Positions 1-6,094 of a stretch of 64,000 bases of DNA are shown piece after piece. The stretch is taken from positions 1-64,000 of the IMG/VR virus record IMGVR_UViG_3300034158_000023; one strand, 5' to 3'. A model generated the notes under the pieces. The model was not told where the DNA came from. It made no database searches and saw nothing but the letters and a program-made list of their open reading frames with translations. Each line of letters starts with the position of its first letter. The stretch's first letter is position 1. The position numbers and the translations under genes were made by a program.

Positions 1-104
1 TCATCGATGAGTTTGAAAACAATATGTCGGCTGAAGACAAATTGTTCTTTGTGGTACCACAGGATATCGTGGACTTTTTGACGGTTTGTAAAACTTACGT
101 CTAA
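1..104 (+). CDS. 3' end of a hypothetical protein (truncated by window start)
   Basis: Open frame from nt 3 (IDEFENNMSAEDKLFFVVPQDIVDFLTVCKTYV) to TAA 102-104, followed directly by a terminator. Confidence 0.7.
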   Translation, partial: IDEFENNMSAEDKLFFVVPQDIVDFLTVCKTYV

Positions 105-127
105 GCCCTTCGGGGCTTTTTTTTTTT
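103..127 (+). terminator. intrinsic terminator
   Basis: AAGCCC-TTCG-GGGCTT followed by a long T run. Confidence 0.9.
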
Positions 128-154
128 GCGGTCTTGTGCAACCTAATGAAGATA

Positions 155-162
155 TATATTAC
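155..162 (+). promoter_or_regulatory. phiKZ-type early (virion RNAP) promoter
   Basis: TATATTAC in a GATATATATTAC context, matching the phiKZ early promoter consensus; lies after a terminator and before an AATAAAAGGA leader. Confidence 0.75.
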
Positions 163-195
163 CTAAGTAGTAAACTACAATAAAAGGATTTCAAC

Positions 196-645
196 ATGGA
201 ACACGTCGATTCATTATTTTTACCTGCCGCTGCTGTACGGGAACTAGAGAAAATAAAGCAGAAACAACGAAACCACACCCTGTCGTATAATCAAAATTTA
301 CTACTGTTGTATTTGAGTGTGAATGACTATGGGTTTTTGGTACTACCCACAAAGTCATTTGCTCAGGTAGCAGAGAGACCTACCTGTGACCTTATCGATA
401 ATGTAACTCACAGGCATAATAAAGTCTTACAACTGATGCGTAACCTACTAAAAACGCAGGATGTTGACCGCACAGAGTTAGCCCAGATACTGTTATTAAC
501 TGGAGAAGCATTAATGACTTTGTTTTACGGCAAATGTGGAAGGTTACATTACCAGACTAGTTTGAGCGTTCTTCCTCCTGATCTTCGTGAGGTCGTTAGT
601 GCACTGGTAGCTGGTTGGATTACGTTAGTGGCCTCAATGGAATAA
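196..645 (+). CDS. hypothetical early protein; distant paralogue of 61288..61845 and 62234..62770
   Basis: AATAAAAGGA leader; LLLLYLSVNDYGFLVL..SFAQVAER resembles LLLLTLVDNGSLAF..GMQVVADKW. Confidence 0.75.
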   Translation: MEHVDSLFLPAAAVRELEKIKQKQRNHTLSYNQNLLLLYLSVNDYGFLVLPTKSFAQVAERPTCDLIDNVTHRHNKVLQLMRNLLKTQDVDRTELAQILLLTGEALMTLFYGKCGRLHYQTSLSVLPPDLREVVSALVAGWITLVASME

Positions 646-658
646 ACAAGGGGGAAGT

Positions 659-1207
659 ATGGAATTAACTGCAACTGCTAAAGAAGTACGTTCTAGAAAA
701 GAGGCTTGGAAAGCATACAAATCTTCAAAAGTAAAAAATGAAATTGACTTAACGGGGAAAAGAATATTAGGGTTTCGTAAATGTTGCACGCATGGCGGGT
801 ATGATCCGTATGTGCTAGAATACCTACACAATACTCGTCGTGTTAAAGTTAAAATGTTATTGACAGGTAAAGATAATTATCGAGAAATCTCAAAAAGTTT
901 AGGTAAGGGAACAAAAGGCACCATATATCGTGGAGCGATGTACTTTTTAGTTATGGATGGGGATGTTCTTTTGCAAGCTATACAGGAATGTACCGTTATC
1001 ACATATACTTACTGGGATAGCAAATTCGTTATACCAGGACTAGTTAAACTTTTTTACTCTTTAAGAGATCACCTTGCATCTGAAGATGTAGATGAAGAAT
1101 ATGTATTTGATCTACTTTTAAAAATAGCTAACCTAACCACAGATGAACTTTACTGGTTAGCTAAAACTAAATACCCATGGGTGTTTAAGGAGGAAGAACA
1201 GTTATAA
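659..1207 (+). CDS. hypothetical protein
   Basis: 182-aa ORF, AAGGGGG RBS, same operon as 196..645. Confidence 0.75.
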   Translation: MELTATAKEVRSRKEAWKAYKSSKVKNEIDLTGKRILGFRKCCTHGGYDPYVLEYLHNTRRVKVKMLLTGKDNYREISKSLGKGTKGTIYRGAMYFLVMDGDVLLQAIQECTVITYTYWDSKFVIPGLVKLFYSLRDHLASEDVDEEYVFDLLLKIANLTTDELYWLAKTKYPWVFKEEEQL

Positions 1208-1254
1208 ATTATTCATACGTAGTATGTAATGAATTCATTTATAGGACATCTGCC

Positions 1255-1992
1255 ATGTTCATGCCAAAACAAGTAAACGATATTCCGCCTAAGGCGCGAA
1301 TATTGATAGTAGGAGGACCACCTTTTGCAGAGTTAAATCTAATCGCTAGAAATCTTAGCAGCTTAATGAATGCTCATTTGTGTACCACGTTGTATGTGGG
1401 TTCTTTAACCTCATTAACTGAATACGATGCCCATGGTATCTTTCAAGGTGAAGTTATTGTAATAGCTTATGCGCATGAGTATAAATACCAGTCTACTGAA
1501 GCTAGGGAGTTTGATTTAGTTTTTTACATCAACCAACCGAATTTAGGTTTAACCGAGAACGTGTCTACTGAGGAACTTCATGAGCATCTAAGTGTGCACA
1601 TTTACTATCTAACACTTCAGTCGATTATGCCTGGAGTACATGTGGTGAATAACACACAACGTTCTATAAGTACTGTGGTAGATAAAATCTTAGACAAAGT
1701 TACAATAGAGTGGCCAACCATTATGCAAAAGGAATCTACTGTAGAAGAGTACCAAGAACGTCATAAGACCAACAGTGTGTTAGTGGGTACCATAGGTCAT
1801 GTTAGAACCCCTAGTGGGTTTAACAACATGGTTATCTATGAAGCTATTGCCAGACTTAATGAAAGGCAACCTGAGGTTGAACCACCTCCACCTGCTGAAC
1901 CACCTAAGCGCGCTGGCACTAATCGCAATGCTCCATGCTACTGCGGTAGCGGTCTCAAGTATAAAAAGTGTTGTTTAAATAATAAAGGGTGA
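1255..1992 (+). CDS. SEC-C motif protein with a degenerate NMP-kinase-like N-terminal region
   Basis: C-terminal RNAPCYCGSGLKYKKCC is a SecA-type metal-binding motif; N-terminal RILIVGGPP..FDLVFYIN resembles the kinase fold but lacks GK[ST]. Confidence 0.85.
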   Translation: MFMPKQVNDIPPKARILIVGGPPFAELNLIARNLSSLMNAHLCTTLYVGSLTSLTEYDAHGIFQGEVIVIAYAHEYKYQSTEAREFDLVFYINQPNLGLTENVSTEELHEHLSVHIYYLTLQSIMPGVHVVNNTQRSISTVVDKILDKVTIEWPTIMQKESTVEEYQERHKTNSVLVGTIGHVRTPSGFNNMVIYEAIARLNERQPEVEPPPPAEPPKRAGTNRNAPCYCGSGLKYKKCCLNNKG

Positions 1993-1995
1993 GGT

Positions 1996-2166
1996 ATGAT
2001 GACTAAGTATAGTAAAGAAGCAACTGCACTAAGTAGCCAATATACCCCACAACCAAAACCATATGTTGCATGGGAACCTCGCAAAGGTAAAATGCGTAAC
2101 ACGTCATGTGAATGTGGTAGTGGTCTCAAATACAAGAAATGTTGTCTCCATAAAAATAAAAGGTGA
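1996..2166 (+). CDS. 56-aa SEC-C microprotein (not in ORF track)
   Basis: Hand-translated MMTKYSKEATALSSQYTPQPKPYVAWEPRKGKMRNTSCECGSGLKYKKCCLHKNKR; GGTGAGG RBS overlaps the previous stop. Confidence 0.85.
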   Translation: MMTKYSKEATALSSQYTPQPKPYVAWEPRKGKMRNTSCECGSGLKYKKCCLHKNKR

Positions 2167-2172
2167 TTTGCG

Positions 2173-2334
2173 ATGGTAAAACTTAAAAAGCGTAAACTGT
2201 CTAGACAAAATAACAGTCTGTGGGAAACCCCTAATCGTCCGCATCACGCGATGTATCCAGGTGAGGGGACTATTAGGAACAAACCTTGTCGTTGCGGCAG
2301 TGGACTTAAGTACAAGAAATGCTGTTTAGTCTAA
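2173..2334 (+). CDS. 53-aa SEC-C microprotein (not in ORF track)
   Basis: Hand-translated MVKLKKRKLSRQNNSLWETPNRPHHAMYPGEGTIRNKPCRCGSGLKYKKCCLV; AAGGTG RBS; fills the gap to tmk exactly. Confidence 0.85.
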   Translation: MVKLKKRKLSRQNNSLWETPNRPHHAMYPGEGTIRNKPCRCGSGLKYKKCCLV

Positions 2335-2344
2335 GGAGAGGACA

Positions 2345-2953
2345 ATGGGACAAATTGCTATTGTCGATGGAGCTGACTATGTAGGTAAAAGTACTACGCT
2401 GGCAGCATTGGCTAAGATTTTAACAGACGCTGGTTATACTGTACACATATACAGAGAACCAGGCGGTCACCCATTTGCTGAAACTATTCGGGAATTGCTT
2501 TTTGATACCGCTGGTCTTAAGCAAGCAAAAAAGTACAAAGCGCTGCTCTTTTATGCGAGTCGGGATATTACCTTAAGAGAAAGCGTTCTGCCGTTATTGA
2601 AAGACGACAATACGATTGTACTGTACGACAGGTTCAATTTAACGTCACTCGTGTATCAAGGGTTGTTAGCCGACGACCTAAAGTACGTTCTCGCTCTAGA
2701 CGAGTTAGTAGTAGGGGACGTTTTTGCTGACATCAAGGTATCTAAGTTTTTACTGACGATTACCCCAGATGAAATGAAACGTCGTCTGGCTTGTAGTCGT
2801 GAGGGTAACTCTTATGACCCTAGTGATGCAGAAGAAGCTATGCGACGTCAGCAAGGGTTTAAAGTTATGGGTAGTACTAGAGGTTACATCGAAATAGATA
2901 ACACCATGGGTGGTGCTACTAAAGCTATATACGACCTATTGCAGGAGGGTTAG
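2345..2953 (+). CDS. tmk: thymidylate (dTMP) kinase
   Basis: P-loop DGADYVGKST, REPGG motif and DRF..TS..YQG motif. Confidence 0.93.
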   Translation: MGQIAIVDGADYVGKSTTLAALAKILTDAGYTVHIYREPGGHPFAETIRELLFDTAGLKQAKKYKALLFYASRDITLRESVLPLLKDDNTIVLYDRFNLTSLVYQGLLADDLKYVLALDELVVGDVFADIKVSKFLLTITPDEMKRRLACSREGNSYDPSDAEEAMRRQQGFKVMGSTRGYIEIDNTMGGATKAIYDLLQEG

Positions 2954-2954
2954 T

Positions 2955-3512
2955 ATGATTGTTCCAACGGTTATATTTGTCCCTTCTGTTATGTGCTCAG
3001 AAGTAGTAGATGCTGAAATCTTTGCTGGTGCTACATATGGGCCGAAAGCTAATGCCGTATCAATTACACCGTATGGGGCTATAGGACCTACTGAAACTGT
3101 GATGATGCTCAGAGAAGCTTTAAAAACTTCTCGTTTTGTTTTCTGTAGTTGGTCTGTGTTATCTGACATGGAAACTACTAACAGAAAAATCTTTATTATG
3201 GACTTAGCGTTAGATTGCTTAGTGATAGAGATTAAAGAGCATCAGCGTGTAAGGTTTGCTGGAAGAAAGGATAGTGTTCCTAGGGCAATGATACAAAAGC
3301 TTAAAGAACTTTATGAGATTCAACCTGCTGTTAAACTACCTCCGGACGTTAAACGTGATTACATTAACGTGTGGTCTGGGTGGACAGATAAGCAAAACAA
3401 TGCCGCTGCAACTGCACCTTCTGATATCATTGACCTGATACCTCAGAAGCCAGTTACTCCAGTTACCATTATTATAAAAGACAGTCTAAAGGCTAAACTA
3501 GCTAGACTTTAA
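2955..3512 (+). CDS. hypothetical protein, possibly a degenerate kinase-like fold
   Basis: Start reassigned to ATG 2955 behind GGAGG; lid-like RFAGRKDSVPRAMIQK; no intact P-loop. Confidence 0.7.
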   Translation: MIVPTVIFVPSVMCSEVVDAEIFAGATYGPKANAVSITPYGAIGPTETVMMLREALKTSRFVFCSWSVLSDMETTNRKIFIMDLALDCLVIEIKEHQRVRFAGRKDSVPRAMIQKLKELYEIQPAVKLPPDVKRDYINVWSGWTDKQNNAAATAPSDIIDLIPQKPVTPVTIIIKDSLKAKLARL

Positions 3513-3548
3513 GTAACATGGTGTGATTTACTCACGAGGATTCACGCC

Positions 3549-4097
3549 ATGAAAGTTAGACAGCTATTAGAATTAATCAATGTTCAACCATTATCTATAG
3601 TTAAACCAGAAGGACAACAAGTGCTGGAGCTTATTAACAAATATAGCCCTAACACTTATGACATTGTTCATTTCACTGGGTCATCTGCCTTAGAGATGAT
3701 ATCCGACTTACCACCCACAGAAGCCAACTTGATATTGGAGACAGAACTCAATGATGGATTAGATTTAACGAGTTACAGGAAAGAGTTACAGAATGTTGTA
3801 GATGGTTCTAAGTCTGGACTATCTAGAAGTATCGTTGTAGCTATTATGACGTTCTTGGTATTTGCTAGTTCCATTACCTACATCCTCTGTATGGCATACG
3901 TAAGTTACCATATGAAAACGTTACCTGGATGGACAGAGATAGCTCTACCCTTCGGTGTACCAGGTATGGTTATATGGAAATACTTCGGTATCATTAACAA
4001 AGAAAGAACTGAGCTCTTGATGGCAGCTATAGGAAGAACACCTCCTACTCCAGTAAGTGTTTTCTCTGAGGTTTCTAGGAGAGTCAGGAACGACTAA
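3549..4097 (+). CDS. membrane protein with two C-terminal TM segments
   Basis: Hydrophobic IVVAIMTFLVFASSITYILCMAYV and IALPFGVPGMVIWKYFG; GAGGA RBS. Confidence 0.75.
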   Translation: MKVRQLLELINVQPLSIVKPEGQQVLELINKYSPNTYDIVHFTGSSALEMISDLPPTEANLILETELNDGLDLTSYRKELQNVVDGSKSGLSRSIVVAIMTFLVFASSITYILCMAYVSYHMKTLPGWTEIALPFGVPGMVIWKYFGIINKERTELLMAAIGRTPPTPVSVFSEVSRRVRND

Positions 4098-4116
4098 TTC
4101 GAAATACCCCAAGATA

Positions 4117-4124
4117 TATATCAC
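4117..4124 (+). promoter_or_regulatory. early promoter variant TATATCAC
   Basis: Intergenic GATATATATCAC, followed by a 10-bp hairpin (4128-4153) and a TAAAAGGA leader. Confidence 0.65.
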
Positions 4125-4175
4125 CCTTAGGATATAGACTTAACTATATCCTATTATTCTAAAAGGAAATGTTCA

Positions 4176-5048
4176 ATGGAAGCTTCACAAAACGTTCCAG
4201 TGTCTACACCACAAATCACTACCGCAATTCAAATCAATGGTAACCAGATGGTAGCATTTGGTACAGACATCGATTGGGCTGAGTCGATGTCACTCACCGT
4301 TGAATCGCCAGATGCTGCGCAATGTATTAAGCGTGTAAGCGAATGGTTAGGCGAACTAGAGATTTACCCTTGGGGCAATTTAGCAGATTACCAAGAGTAT
4401 GCTAACCAAACTCAAGCAGCTCTAACTGACCCACTGATTTATGCACAAATCCGTGAGTATGTTTTAAATGCTCACAGCCAAGCGTTTACGTATTTGCCAA
4501 TGAACATTGGTTACTTAACCGTGGCGTTCACTTTCCGCCGTGTAGACTTAACGTTTACATTGGAAGAAGAGTCTGAAGCTGACATTCAAAATCAGATTGC
4601 TAAGGTAGAAACTGAGTTTGACTTAGATGTGCGTGAGTCAGAGCGAGCTGCTCGTGAGCAAGCAGCGAAAGCAGCGGCCAAGGAGTTTGACTTCGTCGTT
4701 AATCTGCAAAGTACCAAAATGCCGTTCTTAGTATCTGACTTCATTAACGAGGACGGTGTCCTTGTAACCAACATGAAGAAACCTGAAATGCGTGGTGAGC
4801 TTAAACAGGCTACAGTAACCGAGTTGCTCTCGTTCCTGTTAACTGTAGGGACTACCATTACAGCCCCAGATGAAACTACTACTGCCGTAGCACTAGCACA
4901 ACACGCACAAGCGTTTACTCGCCTTAAAGAGCGTTTCTTTGCTCGTGTGCCAGGTGTAGGTACTACGTTCACTGAAAACTGTGAAATCGTAGAAGTTGAT
5001 GATGACCACGGCTTGTCTATTTCAATCCGTGTTACTTTAATCGACTAA
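4176..5048 (+). CDS. acidic hypothetical early protein
   Basis: 290-aa ORF with its own promoter, strong RBS and terminator. Confidence 0.85.
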   Translation: MEASQNVPVSTPQITTAIQINGNQMVAFGTDIDWAESMSLTVESPDAAQCIKRVSEWLGELEIYPWGNLADYQEYANQTQAALTDPLIYAQIREYVLNAHSQAFTYLPMNIGYLTVAFTFRRVDLTFTLEEESEADIQNQIAKVETEFDLDVRESERAAREQAAKAAAKEFDFVVNLQSTKMPFLVSDFINEDGVLVTNMKKPEMRGELKQATVTELLSFLLTVGTTITAPDETTTAVALAQHAQAFTRLKERFFARVPGVGTTFTENCEIVEVDDDHGLSISIRVTLID

Positions 5049-5061
5049 CTATTATGGTTTA

Positions 5062-5090
5062 TAGGGAGAGGGAAACCTCTCCCTAGTTTT
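5062..5090 (+). terminator. hairpin terminator
   Basis: TAGGGAGAGG-GAAA-CCTCTCCCTA-GTTTT. Confidence 0.8.
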
Positions 5091-5102
5091 GGGGATTGTG
5101 TC

Positions 5103-5363
5103 ATGCCATTAGAATTAGAATACTGGAAAAACATAGCTGCTCTCATATTTGCTTCTTATGAGAACGTAGACTGGGATTTAATAGGGGAAGACATTAAAGT
5201 AGCTAAAAGTATGCATGAACCTTATGCAGCTGCTGAACTAGTAGTGTGGGGATTTGCTGATAAGTCTTATACCGCTAAGGTGGATAAACAGGTAATCCGT
5301 GCTAGACTTTTACATATTCAACTCAATAGTGGTTTGTTTAAAATGGTTCCACTCTCGCTCTGA
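5103..5363 (+). CDS. hypothetical protein
   Basis: 86-aa ORF with GGGGA RBS. Confidence 0.65.
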   Translation: MPLELEYWKNIAALIFASYENVDWDLIGEDIKVAKSMHEPYAAAELVVWGFADKSYTAKVDKQVIRARLLHIQLNSGLFKMVPLSL

Positions 5364-5392
5364 CATTTACCTATAATAAAAGGAATACCGAT

Positions 5393-6094
5393 ATGCGCAA
5401 GTTAAAAGATTTCTTACACATAAAACAAATGCCTTTACTGCTAGGCTTCATTGGGTACATAGTACTCTTGCATTTTATTTTCCAGAATACCTTTAACGCA
5501 GGTTACATCCTCTTCACTATCCTAGGGATGGTTGCAGTTCTTGTTATTGCAGTAGCGCAGCTCTTACCTCATGAGTTTGGCGCTGTGTGGGTTAAGGTAT
5601 CCCTATCTCGCAAACAGCTGTTAGATATCCGTAACCAAGGACATGCGGTTCCAGGGATTAACATAGTTGGACACTTTAGAAACAGTACTGAATTCTATAA
5701 CTTCTGTTACAGTCCACTAGATCAGTACACCGACGTTTACGTAAAAGTGCCAGTCTATAATTATTGTTTTGCCAGATTCGATTACGGAGTTACTGGGATT
5801 TTCTTATGGGACGTGGAAGTTAAGAAAATGATTATGGATGCTTTACGATTAGCGTTACGTAATGAGGAACCAGATCCAGAAAACCGTATTGATGTAATGG
5901 TATCACCTACCTCTTTAGAACTAGTTAAAAGCTACCCTATTGAAGTAGTGTATTGTAAAGTACCCGAAGACTACTACGGGTGGCGACAAAGCGCTCTGCG
6001 CATTATATTCACCATAGCTGCACAGATACCTATCTGGAGCTTTGCTGATATTTGGGACATGTGTAAAGAAAAAGTTGGATCATGGATAAAATAA
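5393..6094 (+). CDS. membrane protein with two N-terminal TM helices
   Basis: LLLGFIGYIVLLHFIF and YILFTILGMVAVLVIAVA; AATAAAAGGA leader. Confidence 0.8.
   Translation: MRKLKDFLHIKQMPLLLGFIGYIVLLHFIFQNTFNAGYILFTILGMVAVLVIAVAQLLPHEFGAVWVKVSLSRKQLLDIRNQGHAVPGINIVGHFRNSTEFYNFCYSPLDQYTDVYVKVPVYNYCFARFDYGVTGIFLWDVEVKKMIMDALRLALRNEEPDPENRIDVMVSPTSLELVKSYPIEVVYCKVPEDYYGWRQSALRIIFTIAAQIPIWSFADIWDMCKEKVGSWIK

What the first reader, a model, noticed from the sequence alone, without database searches (positions are those of the whole stretch)
1255..2334. Three consecutive genes ending in a SecA-type SEC-C zinc motif, two of them unannotated microproteins
Seen: 1255..1992, 1996..2166 (56 aa) and 2173..2334 (53 aa) end in RNAPCYCGSGLKYKKCC, RNTSCECGSGLKYKKCC and RNKPCRCGSGLKYKKCC. 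Their N-termini are unrelated. The codons differ (ggtagcggtctc / ggtagtggtctc / ggcagtggactt) while CGSGLKYKKCC is invariant, which suggests selection at protein level. Known: this motif is the C-terminal metal-binding domain of SecA that engages SecB and ribosomes, and also occurs in YecA/YchJ. Inference: a phage cassette of SecA-tail mimics that titrates SecB or ribosome sites (secretion or translation takeover), neutralises SecB-like chaperone-dependent defences such as TAC toxin-antitoxin-chaperone systems, or sequesters metal. This is my best candidate for an undescribed system in the window.
Basis: partly seen in the sequence, partly recalled or inferred. Interest (0 to 1): 0.78.

Follow-up and report, generated by a model that had tools for sequence, protein, structure and literature searches.

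The report
Jumbo-phage proteins with SecA-type metal-binding tails
A nucleus-forming jumbo phage carries three adjacent genes, one 245-residue protein and two tiny very basic proteins, that all end in the metal-binding knob which bacterial SecA and YecA use to dock on ribosomes and the chaperone SecB. The genes are real and under selection, but what they do is untested.

Summary
Three tandem + strand ORFs (1255..1992; 1996/1999..2166; 2173..2334) each score above Pfam's cut-off for SEC-C (PF02810), and they are the only such hits in the 215-kb genome.

The genome is a chimallin-encoding (Chimalliviridae) jumbo phage from metagenomes.

- **ORF1** founds a small clade-specific family. It has a ~200-aa alpha/beta domain (possibly an NMP/thymidylate-kinase-like fold without a Walker A), a variable Pro/Glu linker and the metal-binding domain (MBD). 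It always lies directly upstream of thymidylate kinase (tmk).
- **The two microproteins** are not unrelated. They are two diverged alleles (types A and B) of one small MBD gene, net charge about +10.
- **Their slot** between ORF1 and tmk holds none, A, B, or (here) A+B in different relatives. Recombination breakpoints flank it.
- **Selection:** synonymous differences exceed non-synonymous ones (omega 0.2-0.4). Close strains keep all three frames open.

Binding to SecB or the ribosome is inferred only from motif identity with SecA and YecA. The one complex prediction gave no answer, and the anti-TAC and metal-sequestration ideas have no support. I file this as a new variant of a known domain kind, of moderate interest.

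The parts
1255..1992 (+). ORF1, 245 aa. Residues 1-~205 form a clade-specific alpha/beta domain, followed by a Pro/Glu-rich linker (~206-222) and a C-terminal SecA-type MBD (C-x-C-x8-C-C).
   Evidence: ORF; Pfam SEC-C 33.8 bits at residues 224-241. Full-length homologs at 85, 79, 53 and 50% identity and more distant ones. dN/dS 0.06-0.08 against close relatives. The linker varies in sequence and length while the domain and MBD are kept.
1255..1869 (+). N-terminal domain of ORF1. Possibly an NMP/thymidylate-kinase-like fold, with GGPPFAEL where a Walker A would sit (no GK[ST]).
   Evidence: Profile search of 1.84 billion representatives finds 5 clusters, one of them a spurious repeat protein; no match in cultured phages. 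AF2 model pLDDT 55, pTM 0.51. VIA-align top hits are all NMP kinases, four of the best six thymidylate kinases, at Z 7.6-7.9, which is borderline. ESM Atlas leads are AAA_18/SKI/cytidylate kinase, TM about 0.53. Foldseek not significant. hhalign against the neighbouring tmk not significant.
1924..1977 (+). MBD-coding stretch of ORF1.
   Evidence: Six-frame PF02810 hit, 37.5 bits.
1999..2166 (+). ORF2, type-A microprotein: 55 aa (56 aa if read from the ATG at 1996), pI 9.8, net charge about +9.5. Basic N-terminus, YVAWEPRKGKMRN, then the MBD. RBS GGTGAGG upstream.
   Evidence: Orthologs as the sole microprotein in L048-50 (49 aa) and L051 (53 aa). Excess of synonymous change, Fisher p 0.009-0.024. 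The 1996 ATG is ATA in strain L060.
2173..2334 (+). ORF3, type-B microprotein: 53 aa, pI 10.2, net charge about +10.6. MVKLKKRK..., then SLWETP..MYPGEGTIRN, then the MBD. RBS AAGGTGA upstream.
   Evidence: Ortholog (85% identity) as the sole microprotein in L059, dS 0.34, dN 0.066, omega 0.20, Fisher p 0.002. Intact in strain L060 and in the contigs of runs X5 and X9. Not in the protein collection, so never called as a gene.
2140..2172 (+). ORF2 tail (CCLHKNKR, stop) plus the intergenic RBS. This is a copy of the ORF1-tail/intergenic junction seen in relatives (CCL[NI]HNKR, stop, AAGGTAA...), and is the footprint of the duplication or recombination that put two microprotein genes in tandem.
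   Evidence: DNA alignment A4.
2345..2953 (+). Thymidylate kinase (tmk), the invariant downstream neighbour of ORF1 and the microprotein slot.
   Evidence: PF02223 73.9 bits and phrog_761. Adjacent in all nine lineages examined, the window's included.

Best explanation
**Shown**
- The three ORFs are genuine protein-coding genes of a chimallin-encoding (nucleus-forming) jumbo phage.
- ORF1 belongs to a small phage-clade-specific family with this build: a globular ~200-aa alpha/beta domain, a flexible Pro/Glu linker of variable length, and a canonical SecA-type metal-binding domain (MBD). This copies the 'flexible linker + MBD' tail of SecA and the 'domain + MBD' build of YecA/AscA. ORF1 always sits directly upstream of the phage thymidylate kinase.
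- Between ORF1 and tmk lies a recombination-prone slot for a stand-alone, very basic MBD microprotein. The microprotein exists as two diverged alleles, A and B. Relatives carry none, A or B. This phage carries A+B in tandem.
- ORF2 carries a copy of the ORF1 tail and intergenic junction. This fits unequal or homologous recombination through the conserved MBD-coding and junction sequences.

**Inferred mechanism**
- The MBDs fold around Zn or Fe and act as docking knobs for the host sites that bind SecA and YecA MBDs. These are the ribosome near the exit tunnel (uL23) and the acidic faces of SecB. Anionic membrane is a further possible site.
- ORF1 would thereby be tethered to the host translation and targeting machinery. 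Its N-domain may be a catalytically dead paralog of the neighbouring kinase.
- The free microproteins would occupy the same sites. They would either compete with host SecA, YecA or YchJ as part of host takeover, or tune how much ORF1 is docked.
For: **Coding and motif**
- Pfam hits above cut-off; the only three in the genome.
- RBS before each gene.
- Motif identity with the SecA peptide of 1OZB, with YchJ and with B. subtilis SecA.

**Phage type**
- Split RNAP beta subunits.
- Chimallin PF25677, 108 bits.
- Nearest isolates are Chimalliviridae at about 40% identity.

**ORF1 family**
- Architecture.
- tmk adjacency in all lineages.

**Slot polymorphism and mosaicism**
- Gene content of the slot in relatives.
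- L051 and L059 have 97-100% identical ORF1 but different microprotein alleles and about 70% identical tmk. The window is about 80% identical to L051 in ORF1 but 93-100% from the 3' end of ORF3 onward.
- Duplicated junction.

**Selection**
- ORF1 omega 0.06-0.08. Microproteins omega 0.20-0.43, with Fisher p 0.002-0.024.
- Frames are intact in strain L060 and across 1201-2998 in the contigs of runs X5 and X9. The fragmentary contigs of runs X2 and X4 lay with no gaps.

**Shared constraint**
- In a distant lineage both ORF1 and its microprotein carry the same altered ligand pattern, C-x-C-G-C...C-P. The two DNA copies are only 34/54 identical, so this is not a recent gene conversion.

**Established knowledge for the inference**
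- The SecA MBD binds SecB and ribosomes near uL23 (PMC6620043; PMC4257090).
- The YecA/AscA MBD binds SecB and ribosomes (bioRxiv 10.1101/2020.07.21.215244).
- MBDs bind Fe or Zn, and a conserved Ser matters (bioRxiv 10.1101/613315).
- phiKZ-like phages are known to deploy ribosome-binding proteins (PMC10914614, PMC11849849).
Against: - There is no direct evidence of translation. The 'RNA' runs that hold the locus are probably DNA.
- There is no evidence of any binding. The complex prediction with E. coli SecB gave score 0.00, which the tool says is neither for nor against.
- The host is unknown, so the presence of SecB in it is assumed from the hosts of the nearest isolates.
- The phage motif has Leu where SecA has the first Lys of GSG-KK-YK. 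A contact residue might therefore differ.
- SEC-C motifs occur in many architectures. At least one (YchJ) is reported as a DNA-binding, redox-sensing regulator (PMC13377102), so motif identity does not fix the partner.
- The kinase-like fold of the N-domain rests on a low-confidence model and borderline Z scores.
- Two lineages do without any microprotein, so the microproteins are accessory.
Confidence: 0.45

Rival explanations
1. The microproteins, and the ORF1 tail, are general polyanion or nucleic-acid binders: small basic zinc knuckles that bind phage or host RNA or DNA, for example as regulators or RNA chaperones. On this view they do not mimic SecA tails at SecB or the ribosome exit site.
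For: Net charge about +10 and pI about 10, with KKRK-type N-termini. YchJ, which carries the same motif, is reported to bind a promoter palindrome and to sense ROS (PMC13377102). The MBD's known partners are all polyanionic surfaces.
Against: The motif matches the SecA/YecA MBD at nearly every position, including residues conserved for SecB binding. The YchJ paper links DNA binding to a positively charged surface region and to Cys149-mediated dimerisation, not to the isolated knob. ORF1 has the same linker + MBD build as SecA and YecA.
Confidence: 0.2
2. The MBD tethers a pseudo-thymidylate-kinase (ORF1) to the membrane or to Tmk-containing nucleotide-synthesis complexes. The cluster would then serve phage nucleotide metabolism, with the microproteins as regulators of that tether, and not host takeover of secretion or translation.
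For: Invariant ORF1-tmk adjacency. NMP/thymidylate-kinase-like fold leads from three methods. [quoted passage not shown]
Against: The fold assignment is borderline (Z below 8, pLDDT 55). There is no Walker A. hhalign between the ORF1 domain and tmk is not significant. No heterodimer test could be run.
Confidence: 0.15
3. Anti-defence decoys: the free MBDs neutralise a host defence that depends on a SEC-C/MBD interaction or on SecB-like chaperones, such as TAC systems or SEC-C-bearing systems like Rugutis.
For: The slot is hypervariable, mosaic and shows presence/absence polymorphism, as counter-defence loci often do. A lactococcal antiphage protein, Rugutis, has an N-terminal SEC-C motif (PMC11381338).
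Against: No defence system is known to be controlled through the MBD-binding face of SecB. In the TAC system the review describes, the chaperone acts on the antitoxin (PMC4257090). There is no homology to any known anti-defence protein. Rugutis comes from an unrelated Gram-positive host.
Confidence: 0.1
4. The microproteins are functionless by-products of recombination between MBD-coding repeats, that is, duplication debris.
For: Copy number varies from 0 to 2 and two lineages lack them. ORF2 carries a duplicated ORF1 tail and junction.
Against: Synonymous differences significantly exceed non-synonymous ones. Each has its own RBS. Both alleles persist as intact ORFs in separate lineages and strains. 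A distant lineage keeps a microprotein with a co-varying ligand pattern.
Confidence: 0.07

Closest known systems
C-terminal tail of SecA (flexible linker domain + metal-binding domain; Pfam SEC-C PF02810; structures 1OZB, 1SX1, 1TM6)
   Same: Same C-x-C-G-S-G-x-K-Y-K-x-C-[CH] knob preceded by R-N. ORF1 also has a flexible linker before it. The knob matches the SecB-bound SecA peptide at 13 of 16 positions.
   Different: No SecA ATPase domains. The phage proteins are 53-245 aa. There is Leu in place of the first Lys after GSG, and the ending is C-C, not the C-H of E. coli SecA.
YecA/AscA (UPF0149 domain + MBD) of E. coli
   Same: A globular domain followed by a terminal MBD with a C-C-L ending. 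The YecA MBD binds SecB and ribosomes in vitro (bioRxiv 10.1101/2020.07.21.215244).
   Different: ORF1's N-domain is unrelated. The NCBIfam YecA model scores 23-26 bits against a cut-off of 149, on the motif only.
YchJ (UPF0225; MBDs at both ends)
   Same: Best PDB match of the microprotein profile is the YchJ C-terminal peptide 9L6B (E 1.5e-6).
   Different: No NTF2-like core and only one MBD. YchJ-family models score far below their cut-offs.
Small stand-alone SEC-C proteins (for example the PBPRA1643 family TIGR04102, and 'SEC-C motif protein' of Vibrio phages D4 and Virtus and Croceibacter phage P2559Y)
   Same: Short proteins that are little more than an MBD. They are abundant: 1,632 hits of 31-98 aa. 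They occur in many viral contigs and in another chimallivirus-like Vibrio jumbo phage.
   Different: Only motif-level similarity (27-31 bits against a cut-off of 68). None of 43 other viral loci has two copies within 10 kb. None is paired with an ORF1-type gene. None has a known function.
Ribosome-binding early proteins of phiKZ-like phages (phiKZ gp014, Churi homolog)
   Same: Precedent that nucleus-forming jumbo phages send small proteins to host ribosomes (PMC10914614, PMC11849849).
   Different: The comparison is by concept only; no sequence comparison with gp014 was run. Binding here is not shown.

Membership tests
Pfam SEC-C / SecA-like metal-binding domain (PF02810) | Profile match at or above the gathering score | tested here: met
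   33.8, 27.4 and 29.8 bits against 20.4; 37.5, 27.7 and 30.2 bits in the six-frame scan.
Pfam SEC-C / SecA-like metal-binding domain (PF02810) | Four metal ligands C-x-C-x8-C-[CH], plus the conserved Ser, Gly and aromatic residue | tested here: met
   C-x-C-G-S-G-L-K-Y-K-K-C-C in all three proteins, aligned to the SecA and YchJ peptides.
Pfam SEC-C / SecA-like metal-binding domain (PF02810) | Actual Zn/Fe binding and binding to SecB or ribosomes | not testable with these tools
   The complex prediction gave no answer. This needs biochemistry.
SecA translocase | DEAD-like motor, preprotein cross-linking and helical scaffold domains | tested here: not met
   Pfam finds only SEC-C in the three proteins.
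YecA/AscA (NF007704) | Whole-protein score above the curated cut-off (UPF0149 domain + MBD) | tested here: not met
   23.4-26.1 bits against 149, motif only.
YchJ family (NF002486, PRK01617 and relatives) | Whole-protein score above the cut-off; NTF2-like core with two MBDs | tested here: not met
   16-26 bits against 120-158.
PBPRA1643 SWIM/SEC-C family (TIGR04102) | Whole-protein score of at least 68 bits | tested here: not met
   27.6-30.8 bits, last ~20 profile positions only.
P-loop NMP kinases (thymidylate, cytidylate, adenylate, shikimate kinase fold), for the ORF1 N-domain | Walker A G-x4-G-K-[ST] | tested here: not met
   The corresponding loop reads GGPPFAEL, or GSSFSRDI in the most distant homolog. 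Only G20 is invariant and there is no Lys.
P-loop NMP kinases (thymidylate, cytidylate, adenylate, shikimate kinase fold), for the ORF1 N-domain | Three-layer alpha/beta fold superposable on NMP kinases | tested here: inconclusive
   VIA-align top 9 hits are all nucleotide kinases, at Z 7.2-7.9, which is the tool's noise ceiling. ESM Atlas TM 0.53-0.55. Foldseek E at or above 0.03. Model pLDDT 55. hhalign against phage tmk gives probability 0.3%.
Chimalliviridae (nucleus-forming jumbo phages), for the genome | Chimallin shell protein and split multisubunit RNA polymerases | tested here: met
   PF25677 108 bits at G000:126134-127972. phrog_3148 and phrog_2986 RNAP beta subunits.

The most novel reading that the evidence does not exclude
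A nucleus-forming jumbo phage deploys free SecA-tail microproteins, together with an MBD-tethered pseudo-kinase, to occupy the MBD receptor sites on host ribosomes and SecB. This would be the first viral interference with that docking site. The microproteins would act as competitive decoys derived from the same module as the larger protein, and their allele and copy number would be shuffled by recombination through the MBD-coding repeats.
Probability: 0.25. Interest if true: 0.8.

Novelty: new variant of a known kind. Interest (0 to 1): 0.55.

Why it matters
The SecA-type metal-binding domain is a well-defined docking knob for SecB and the ribosome exit region. Its many stand-alone and fused copies outside SecA are almost unstudied, and none has been studied in a virus.

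**What this locus offers**
- A compact natural experiment: one tethered MBD protein plus 0-2 free MBD microproteins.
- Clear signs of selection, of allele swapping, and of co-variation of the metal ligands.
- All of this sits in a phage family already known to manipulate host ribosomes.

**If the MBDs bind ribosomes or SecB**
- It would reveal a new host-takeover route, namely blocking or hijacking co- and post-translational targeting.
- It would give small genetically encoded probes or inhibitors of the SecA-SecB-ribosome interface.

**The ligand-swap variant**
- In the variant, Ser becomes Cys while the last Cys becomes Pro.
- This independently supports the published proposal that the conserved Ser position lies in the metal's coordination sphere.

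Tried and rejected
1. Megablast and tblastn of the region and of ORF1 against 50,697 phage records found no relative.
2. IMG/VR and JGI metagenome scans with the N-domain profile found no further relatives. The first IMG/VR scan returned only motif-level hits.
3. The complex prediction of an E. coli SecB tetramer with Zn and ORF2 scored 0.00. The tool's verdict was 'no answer', so it is not used as evidence either way.
4. AF2 of full-length ORF1 failed (pLDDT 36.6). The N-domain model is modest (pLDDT 55). Foldseek against the PDB gave nothing significant.
5. The idea that ORF1's domain is a recognisable paralog of the neighbouring tmk was not supported by profile-profile comparison. It is kept only as a fold-level lead.
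6. No phage-encoded SecB was found.
7. Rfam found no RNA family in 1-6000. Sigma-70-like promoter matches are no more frequent than in shuffles.
8. Laying RNA runs for transcription evidence failed, because the 'RNA' wastewater runs look like DNA.
9. Recent gene conversion, as an explanation for identical peptides, was rejected. Motif copies are only 63-70% identical at the DNA level with saturated synonymous sites.
10. Minus-strand ORFs overlapping the locus (1938..2135, 2104..2247) were judged to be shadows of the + strand genes. They were not looked for in relatives.
Full report
**1. The observation**

The window has three consecutive + strand ORFs at 1255..1992 (245 aa), 1996..2166 (56 aa) and 2173..2334 (53 aa). 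Each carries R-N-x-x-C-x-C-G-S-G-L-K-Y-K-K-C-C-L two to six residues before its stop.

All three score above Pfam's gathering threshold for SEC-C (PF02810): 33.8, 27.4 and 29.8 bits against 20.4. A six-frame scan of the whole 215,386-bp genome finds exactly these three hits. The motif copies are only 35-38 of 54 nucleotides identical to one another. The repeated peptide is therefore not a recent DNA repeat.

Each gene has a Shine-Dalgarno-like sequence. No Rfam family lies in 1-6000.

In a 98%-identical strain the ATG at 1996 is ATA. ORF2 therefore probably starts at 1999 (55 aa), the form JGI/IMG called. ORF3's sequence is absent from a 15-billion-protein collection, so it has never been called as a gene.

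**2. The genome**

The record is an IMG/VR viral genome with 41% G+C. Its 127-bp terminal repeat looks like an assembly overlap.

It encodes split multisubunit RNA polymerase beta subunits. It also encodes a chimallin: PF25677, 108 bits, at G000:126134-127972.

Its nearest cultured relatives are Chimalliviridae of Enterobacterales and Vibrio, at only about 40% protein identity. It is therefore a nucleus-forming jumbo phage with an unknown, probably gammaproteobacterial, host.

Near-identical sequence occurs in peat (probably the source sample), biofilm, groundwater, gut, freshwater, food and wastewater runs.

**3. ORF1 is a conserved, clade-specific protein**

A word-indexed search found full-length homologs at 85, 79, 53 and 50% identity. 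An exhaustive profile search with the N-terminal domain against 1.84 billion representatives found five clusters, one of them a spurious repeat protein. Cultured phages, IMG/VR and JGI metagenomes gave nothing more.

- All homologs but one share the same build: a conserved ~200-aa domain, a linker of variable sequence and length that is Pro/Glu-rich in the window's clade (about 20 to about 190 residues), and a terminal MBD.
- The exception, a 164-aa homolog, lacks the tail.
- dN/dS against close relatives is 0.06-0.08.
- In every lineage the gene lies directly upstream of thymidylate kinase.

The domain has no sequence match in the PDB. The best AF2 model is modest (pLDDT 55). Three independent looks point the same way:

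- ESM Atlas features and structure give AAA_18, shikimate kinase and cytidylate kinase, TM about 0.53.
- Weak Foldseek hits include Fap7, guanylate kinase and thymidylate kinase.
- An exhaustive VIA-align search puts nucleotide monophosphate kinases in all top nine places, four of the best six being thymidylate kinases, at Z 7.2-7.9.

That Z range is the tool's stated noise ceiling. The loop where a Walker A would sit reads GGPPFAEL, with no Lys. A profile-profile comparison with the neighbouring tmk is not significant. A 'dead NMP-kinase-like domain' is therefore a lead, not a finding.

**4. The microproteins are two alleles of one gene in a variable slot**

| Lineage | Between ORF1 and tmk |
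|---|---|
| L048-50 (ORF1 85% identical) | one 49-aa SEC-C gene |
| L051 | one 53-aa SEC-C gene |
| L059 | one 55-aa SEC-C gene |
| L052/53 | nothing |
| L054/55 | nothing |
| L056 | nothing |
| L057 | one 88-aa gene |

- Window ORF2 is the ortholog of the L048 and L051 genes. This is type A...[YF][VI]AWEPR[KE]GK[IM]RN followed by the MBD.
- Window ORF3 is the ortholog of the L059 gene. This is type B, 85% identical, dS 0.34, dN 0.066.
- Types A and B align end to end: 53% identity over 53/55 residues between L051 and L059. ORF2 and ORF3 align from residue ~20 onward.

Both are extremely basic, with pI about 10 and net charge about +10. Synonymous differences significantly exceed non-synonymous ones in every orthologous pair (Fisher p 0.002-0.024; omega 0.20-0.43).

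A 98% strain (L060) keeps all three frames. So do a 40-kb contig from a gut run and a contig from a wastewater run, both of which span 1201-2998 without gaps. Fragmentary contigs from biofilm and groundwater runs also lay without gaps.

**5. How the tandem pair arose**

The locus is a mosaic.

- L051 and L059 are 97-100% identical across ORF1. They drop to about 45% in the microprotein and about 70% in tmk.
- The window is about 80% identical to L051 in ORF1, but 93-100% identical from the last codons of ORF3 through more than 1.7 kb downstream.

The breakpoints therefore flank the slot. They lie at the conserved MBD-coding and junction sequences.

ORF2's tail and the following intergenic stretch (CCLHKNKR, stop, AAGGTGA...) match the ORF1 tail and intergenic junction of relatives (CCL[NI]HNKR, stop, AAGGTAA...). 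This is what unequal or homologous recombination between an ORF1 MBD and a microprotein MBD would leave. Such an event would place an A allele and a B allele in tandem.

None of 43 other viral loci with the GLKYKKCC peptide has a second SEC-C copy within 10 kb.

**6. Shared constraint on the metal site**

Two distant ORF1 homologs end in C-x-C-G-C-G-x-K-x-K-x-C-P-N. Here the conserved Ser has become Cys and the last Cys has become Pro.

In the one such lineage that has a microprotein (L057), that microprotein carries the same altered pattern. The two coding stretches are only 34/54 identical.

The number of Cys ligands stays at four while the position of one moves. The large and small proteins change together. 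This argues that metal binding, and probably a common partner, is what selection maintains.

It also fits the published proposal that the conserved Ser position contributes to metal coordination (bioRxiv 10.1101/613315).

**7. Mechanism**

*Established knowledge:*
- The SecA MBD binds the acidic faces of the SecB tetramer (PMC4257090; structure 1OZB).
- It also binds 70S ribosomes near uL23, in a Cys-dependent way (PMC6620043).
- YecA/AscA, a chaperone domain with a nearly identical MBD, binds SecB and ribosomes through the MBD (bioRxiv 10.1101/2020.07.21.215244).
- MBDs bind Fe or Zn.
- phiKZ-like phages send proteins to host ribosomes (PMC10914614, PMC11849849).

*Inference:*
- ORF1 is tethered by its linker and MBD to these host sites.
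- The free, highly basic MBD microproteins occupy the same sites. They would displace SecA, YecA or YchJ, or tune ORF1's docking.

I put about 0.35-0.45 on MBD-mediated docking to ribosome or SecB. None of it is shown. The single complex prediction (SecB tetramer with Zn and ORF2) returned 'no answer'. The phage encodes no SecB of its own.

*Rivals:*
- General nucleic-acid binding, with YchJ as precedent (PMC13377102).
- A nucleotide-metabolism role linked to tmk.
- Anti-defence decoys. The only hints are the hypervariable slot and a SEC-C motif in the lactococcal antiphage protein Rugutis (PMC11381338).
- Duplication debris, which the selection data contradict.

**8. Comparison and novelty**

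At domain level the three proteins are members of Pfam SEC-C. They are not members of SecA, YecA, YchJ or the PBPRA1643 family, whose curated models match only the motif and score far below their cut-offs.

Small stand-alone SEC-C proteins are common: 1,632 hits of 31-98 aa. They are already annotated in some phages. One example is a 104-aa protein at another genomic position in the chimallivirus-like Vibrio jumbo phage pVp-JHP1101.

The literature searches found no functional study of a phage SEC-C protein. A 2026 review of jumbo phages does not mention SecA, SecB or SEC-C.

*What is new here:*
- The ORF1 family.
- Its fixed pairing with tmk.
- The allelic, copy-number-variable microprotein slot.
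- The co-varying ligand swap.

I rate it a new variant of a known kind, with interest 0.55.

Noticed in passing
window 2330-4150 compared with L051 and L059: tmk and more than 1.7 kb downstream are 93-100% identical between the window and L051, while ORF1 just upstream is only about 80% identical. L051 and L059 show the opposite pattern. This is sharp mosaicism among closely related jumbo phages, with breakpoints at the microprotein slot.
   Followed up: yes
window 1198-1201: A 40-kb contig from a gut-metagenome run (X5) carries 544 extra bases here. Relatives (L048, L051, L059) have an additional ~179-aa gene before ORF1 that this genome lacks.
   Followed up: partly
L056:5001-5642, L057:778-1821 and L057:1825-2091: Distant homologs carry a variant metal motif, C-x-C-G-C-x-x-K-x-K-x-C-P-N (Ser to Cys, last Cys to Pro), in both the large protein and the microprotein. 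This is a ligand-position swap that keeps four Cys.
   Followed up: yes
L058:334-828 and L058:803-1810: The most distant ORF1 homolog (164 aa) has no linker or MBD. Its neighbouring thymidylate kinase is extended to 336 aa by an unknown C-terminal region.
   Followed up: no
L061 (G000:66161-68080, just outside the window): A 639-aa protein whose residues 338-639 are thymidylate synthase (PF00303). The ~337-aa N-terminal part has no Pfam match.
   Followed up: no
window 103-118 and 4128-4153: Two terminator-like hairpins. The first is a strong G+C stem followed by a run of ten T. They bracket the + strand gene block 196..4097 that contains the SEC-C genes and tmk, so the block may be one transcription unit.
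   Followed up: no
window 2910-3512: The listed GTG-start ORF overlaps the end of tmk. An ATG at 2955 preceded by GGAGGG gives 185 aa, which matches the 185-186-aa gene that follows tmk in L051, L059 and L060.
   Followed up: partly
L047:3854-4168 (Vibrio phage pVp-JHP1101, gp165): Another jumbo phage, one of the nearer relatives by vRNAP subunit, encodes a 104-aa protein with a Lys-rich N-terminus, a SecA-like C-x-C-x8-C-H knob and an acidic tail. It lies near the big transglycosylase gene, so it is not syntenic with this locus and probably reflects an independent acquisition.
   Followed up: partly
whole genome G000 (ends): The 'direct terminal repeat' is exactly 127 bp, the size of an assembler k-mer overlap. 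The position of the locus near the 'left end' therefore has no biological meaning.
   Followed up: partly
window 600-3000: Near-identical phage sequence occurs in runs from peat, biofilm, groundwater, gut, freshwater, food and wastewater, and in two runs labelled as single organisms (names coded). Those two might point to the host.
   Followed up: no
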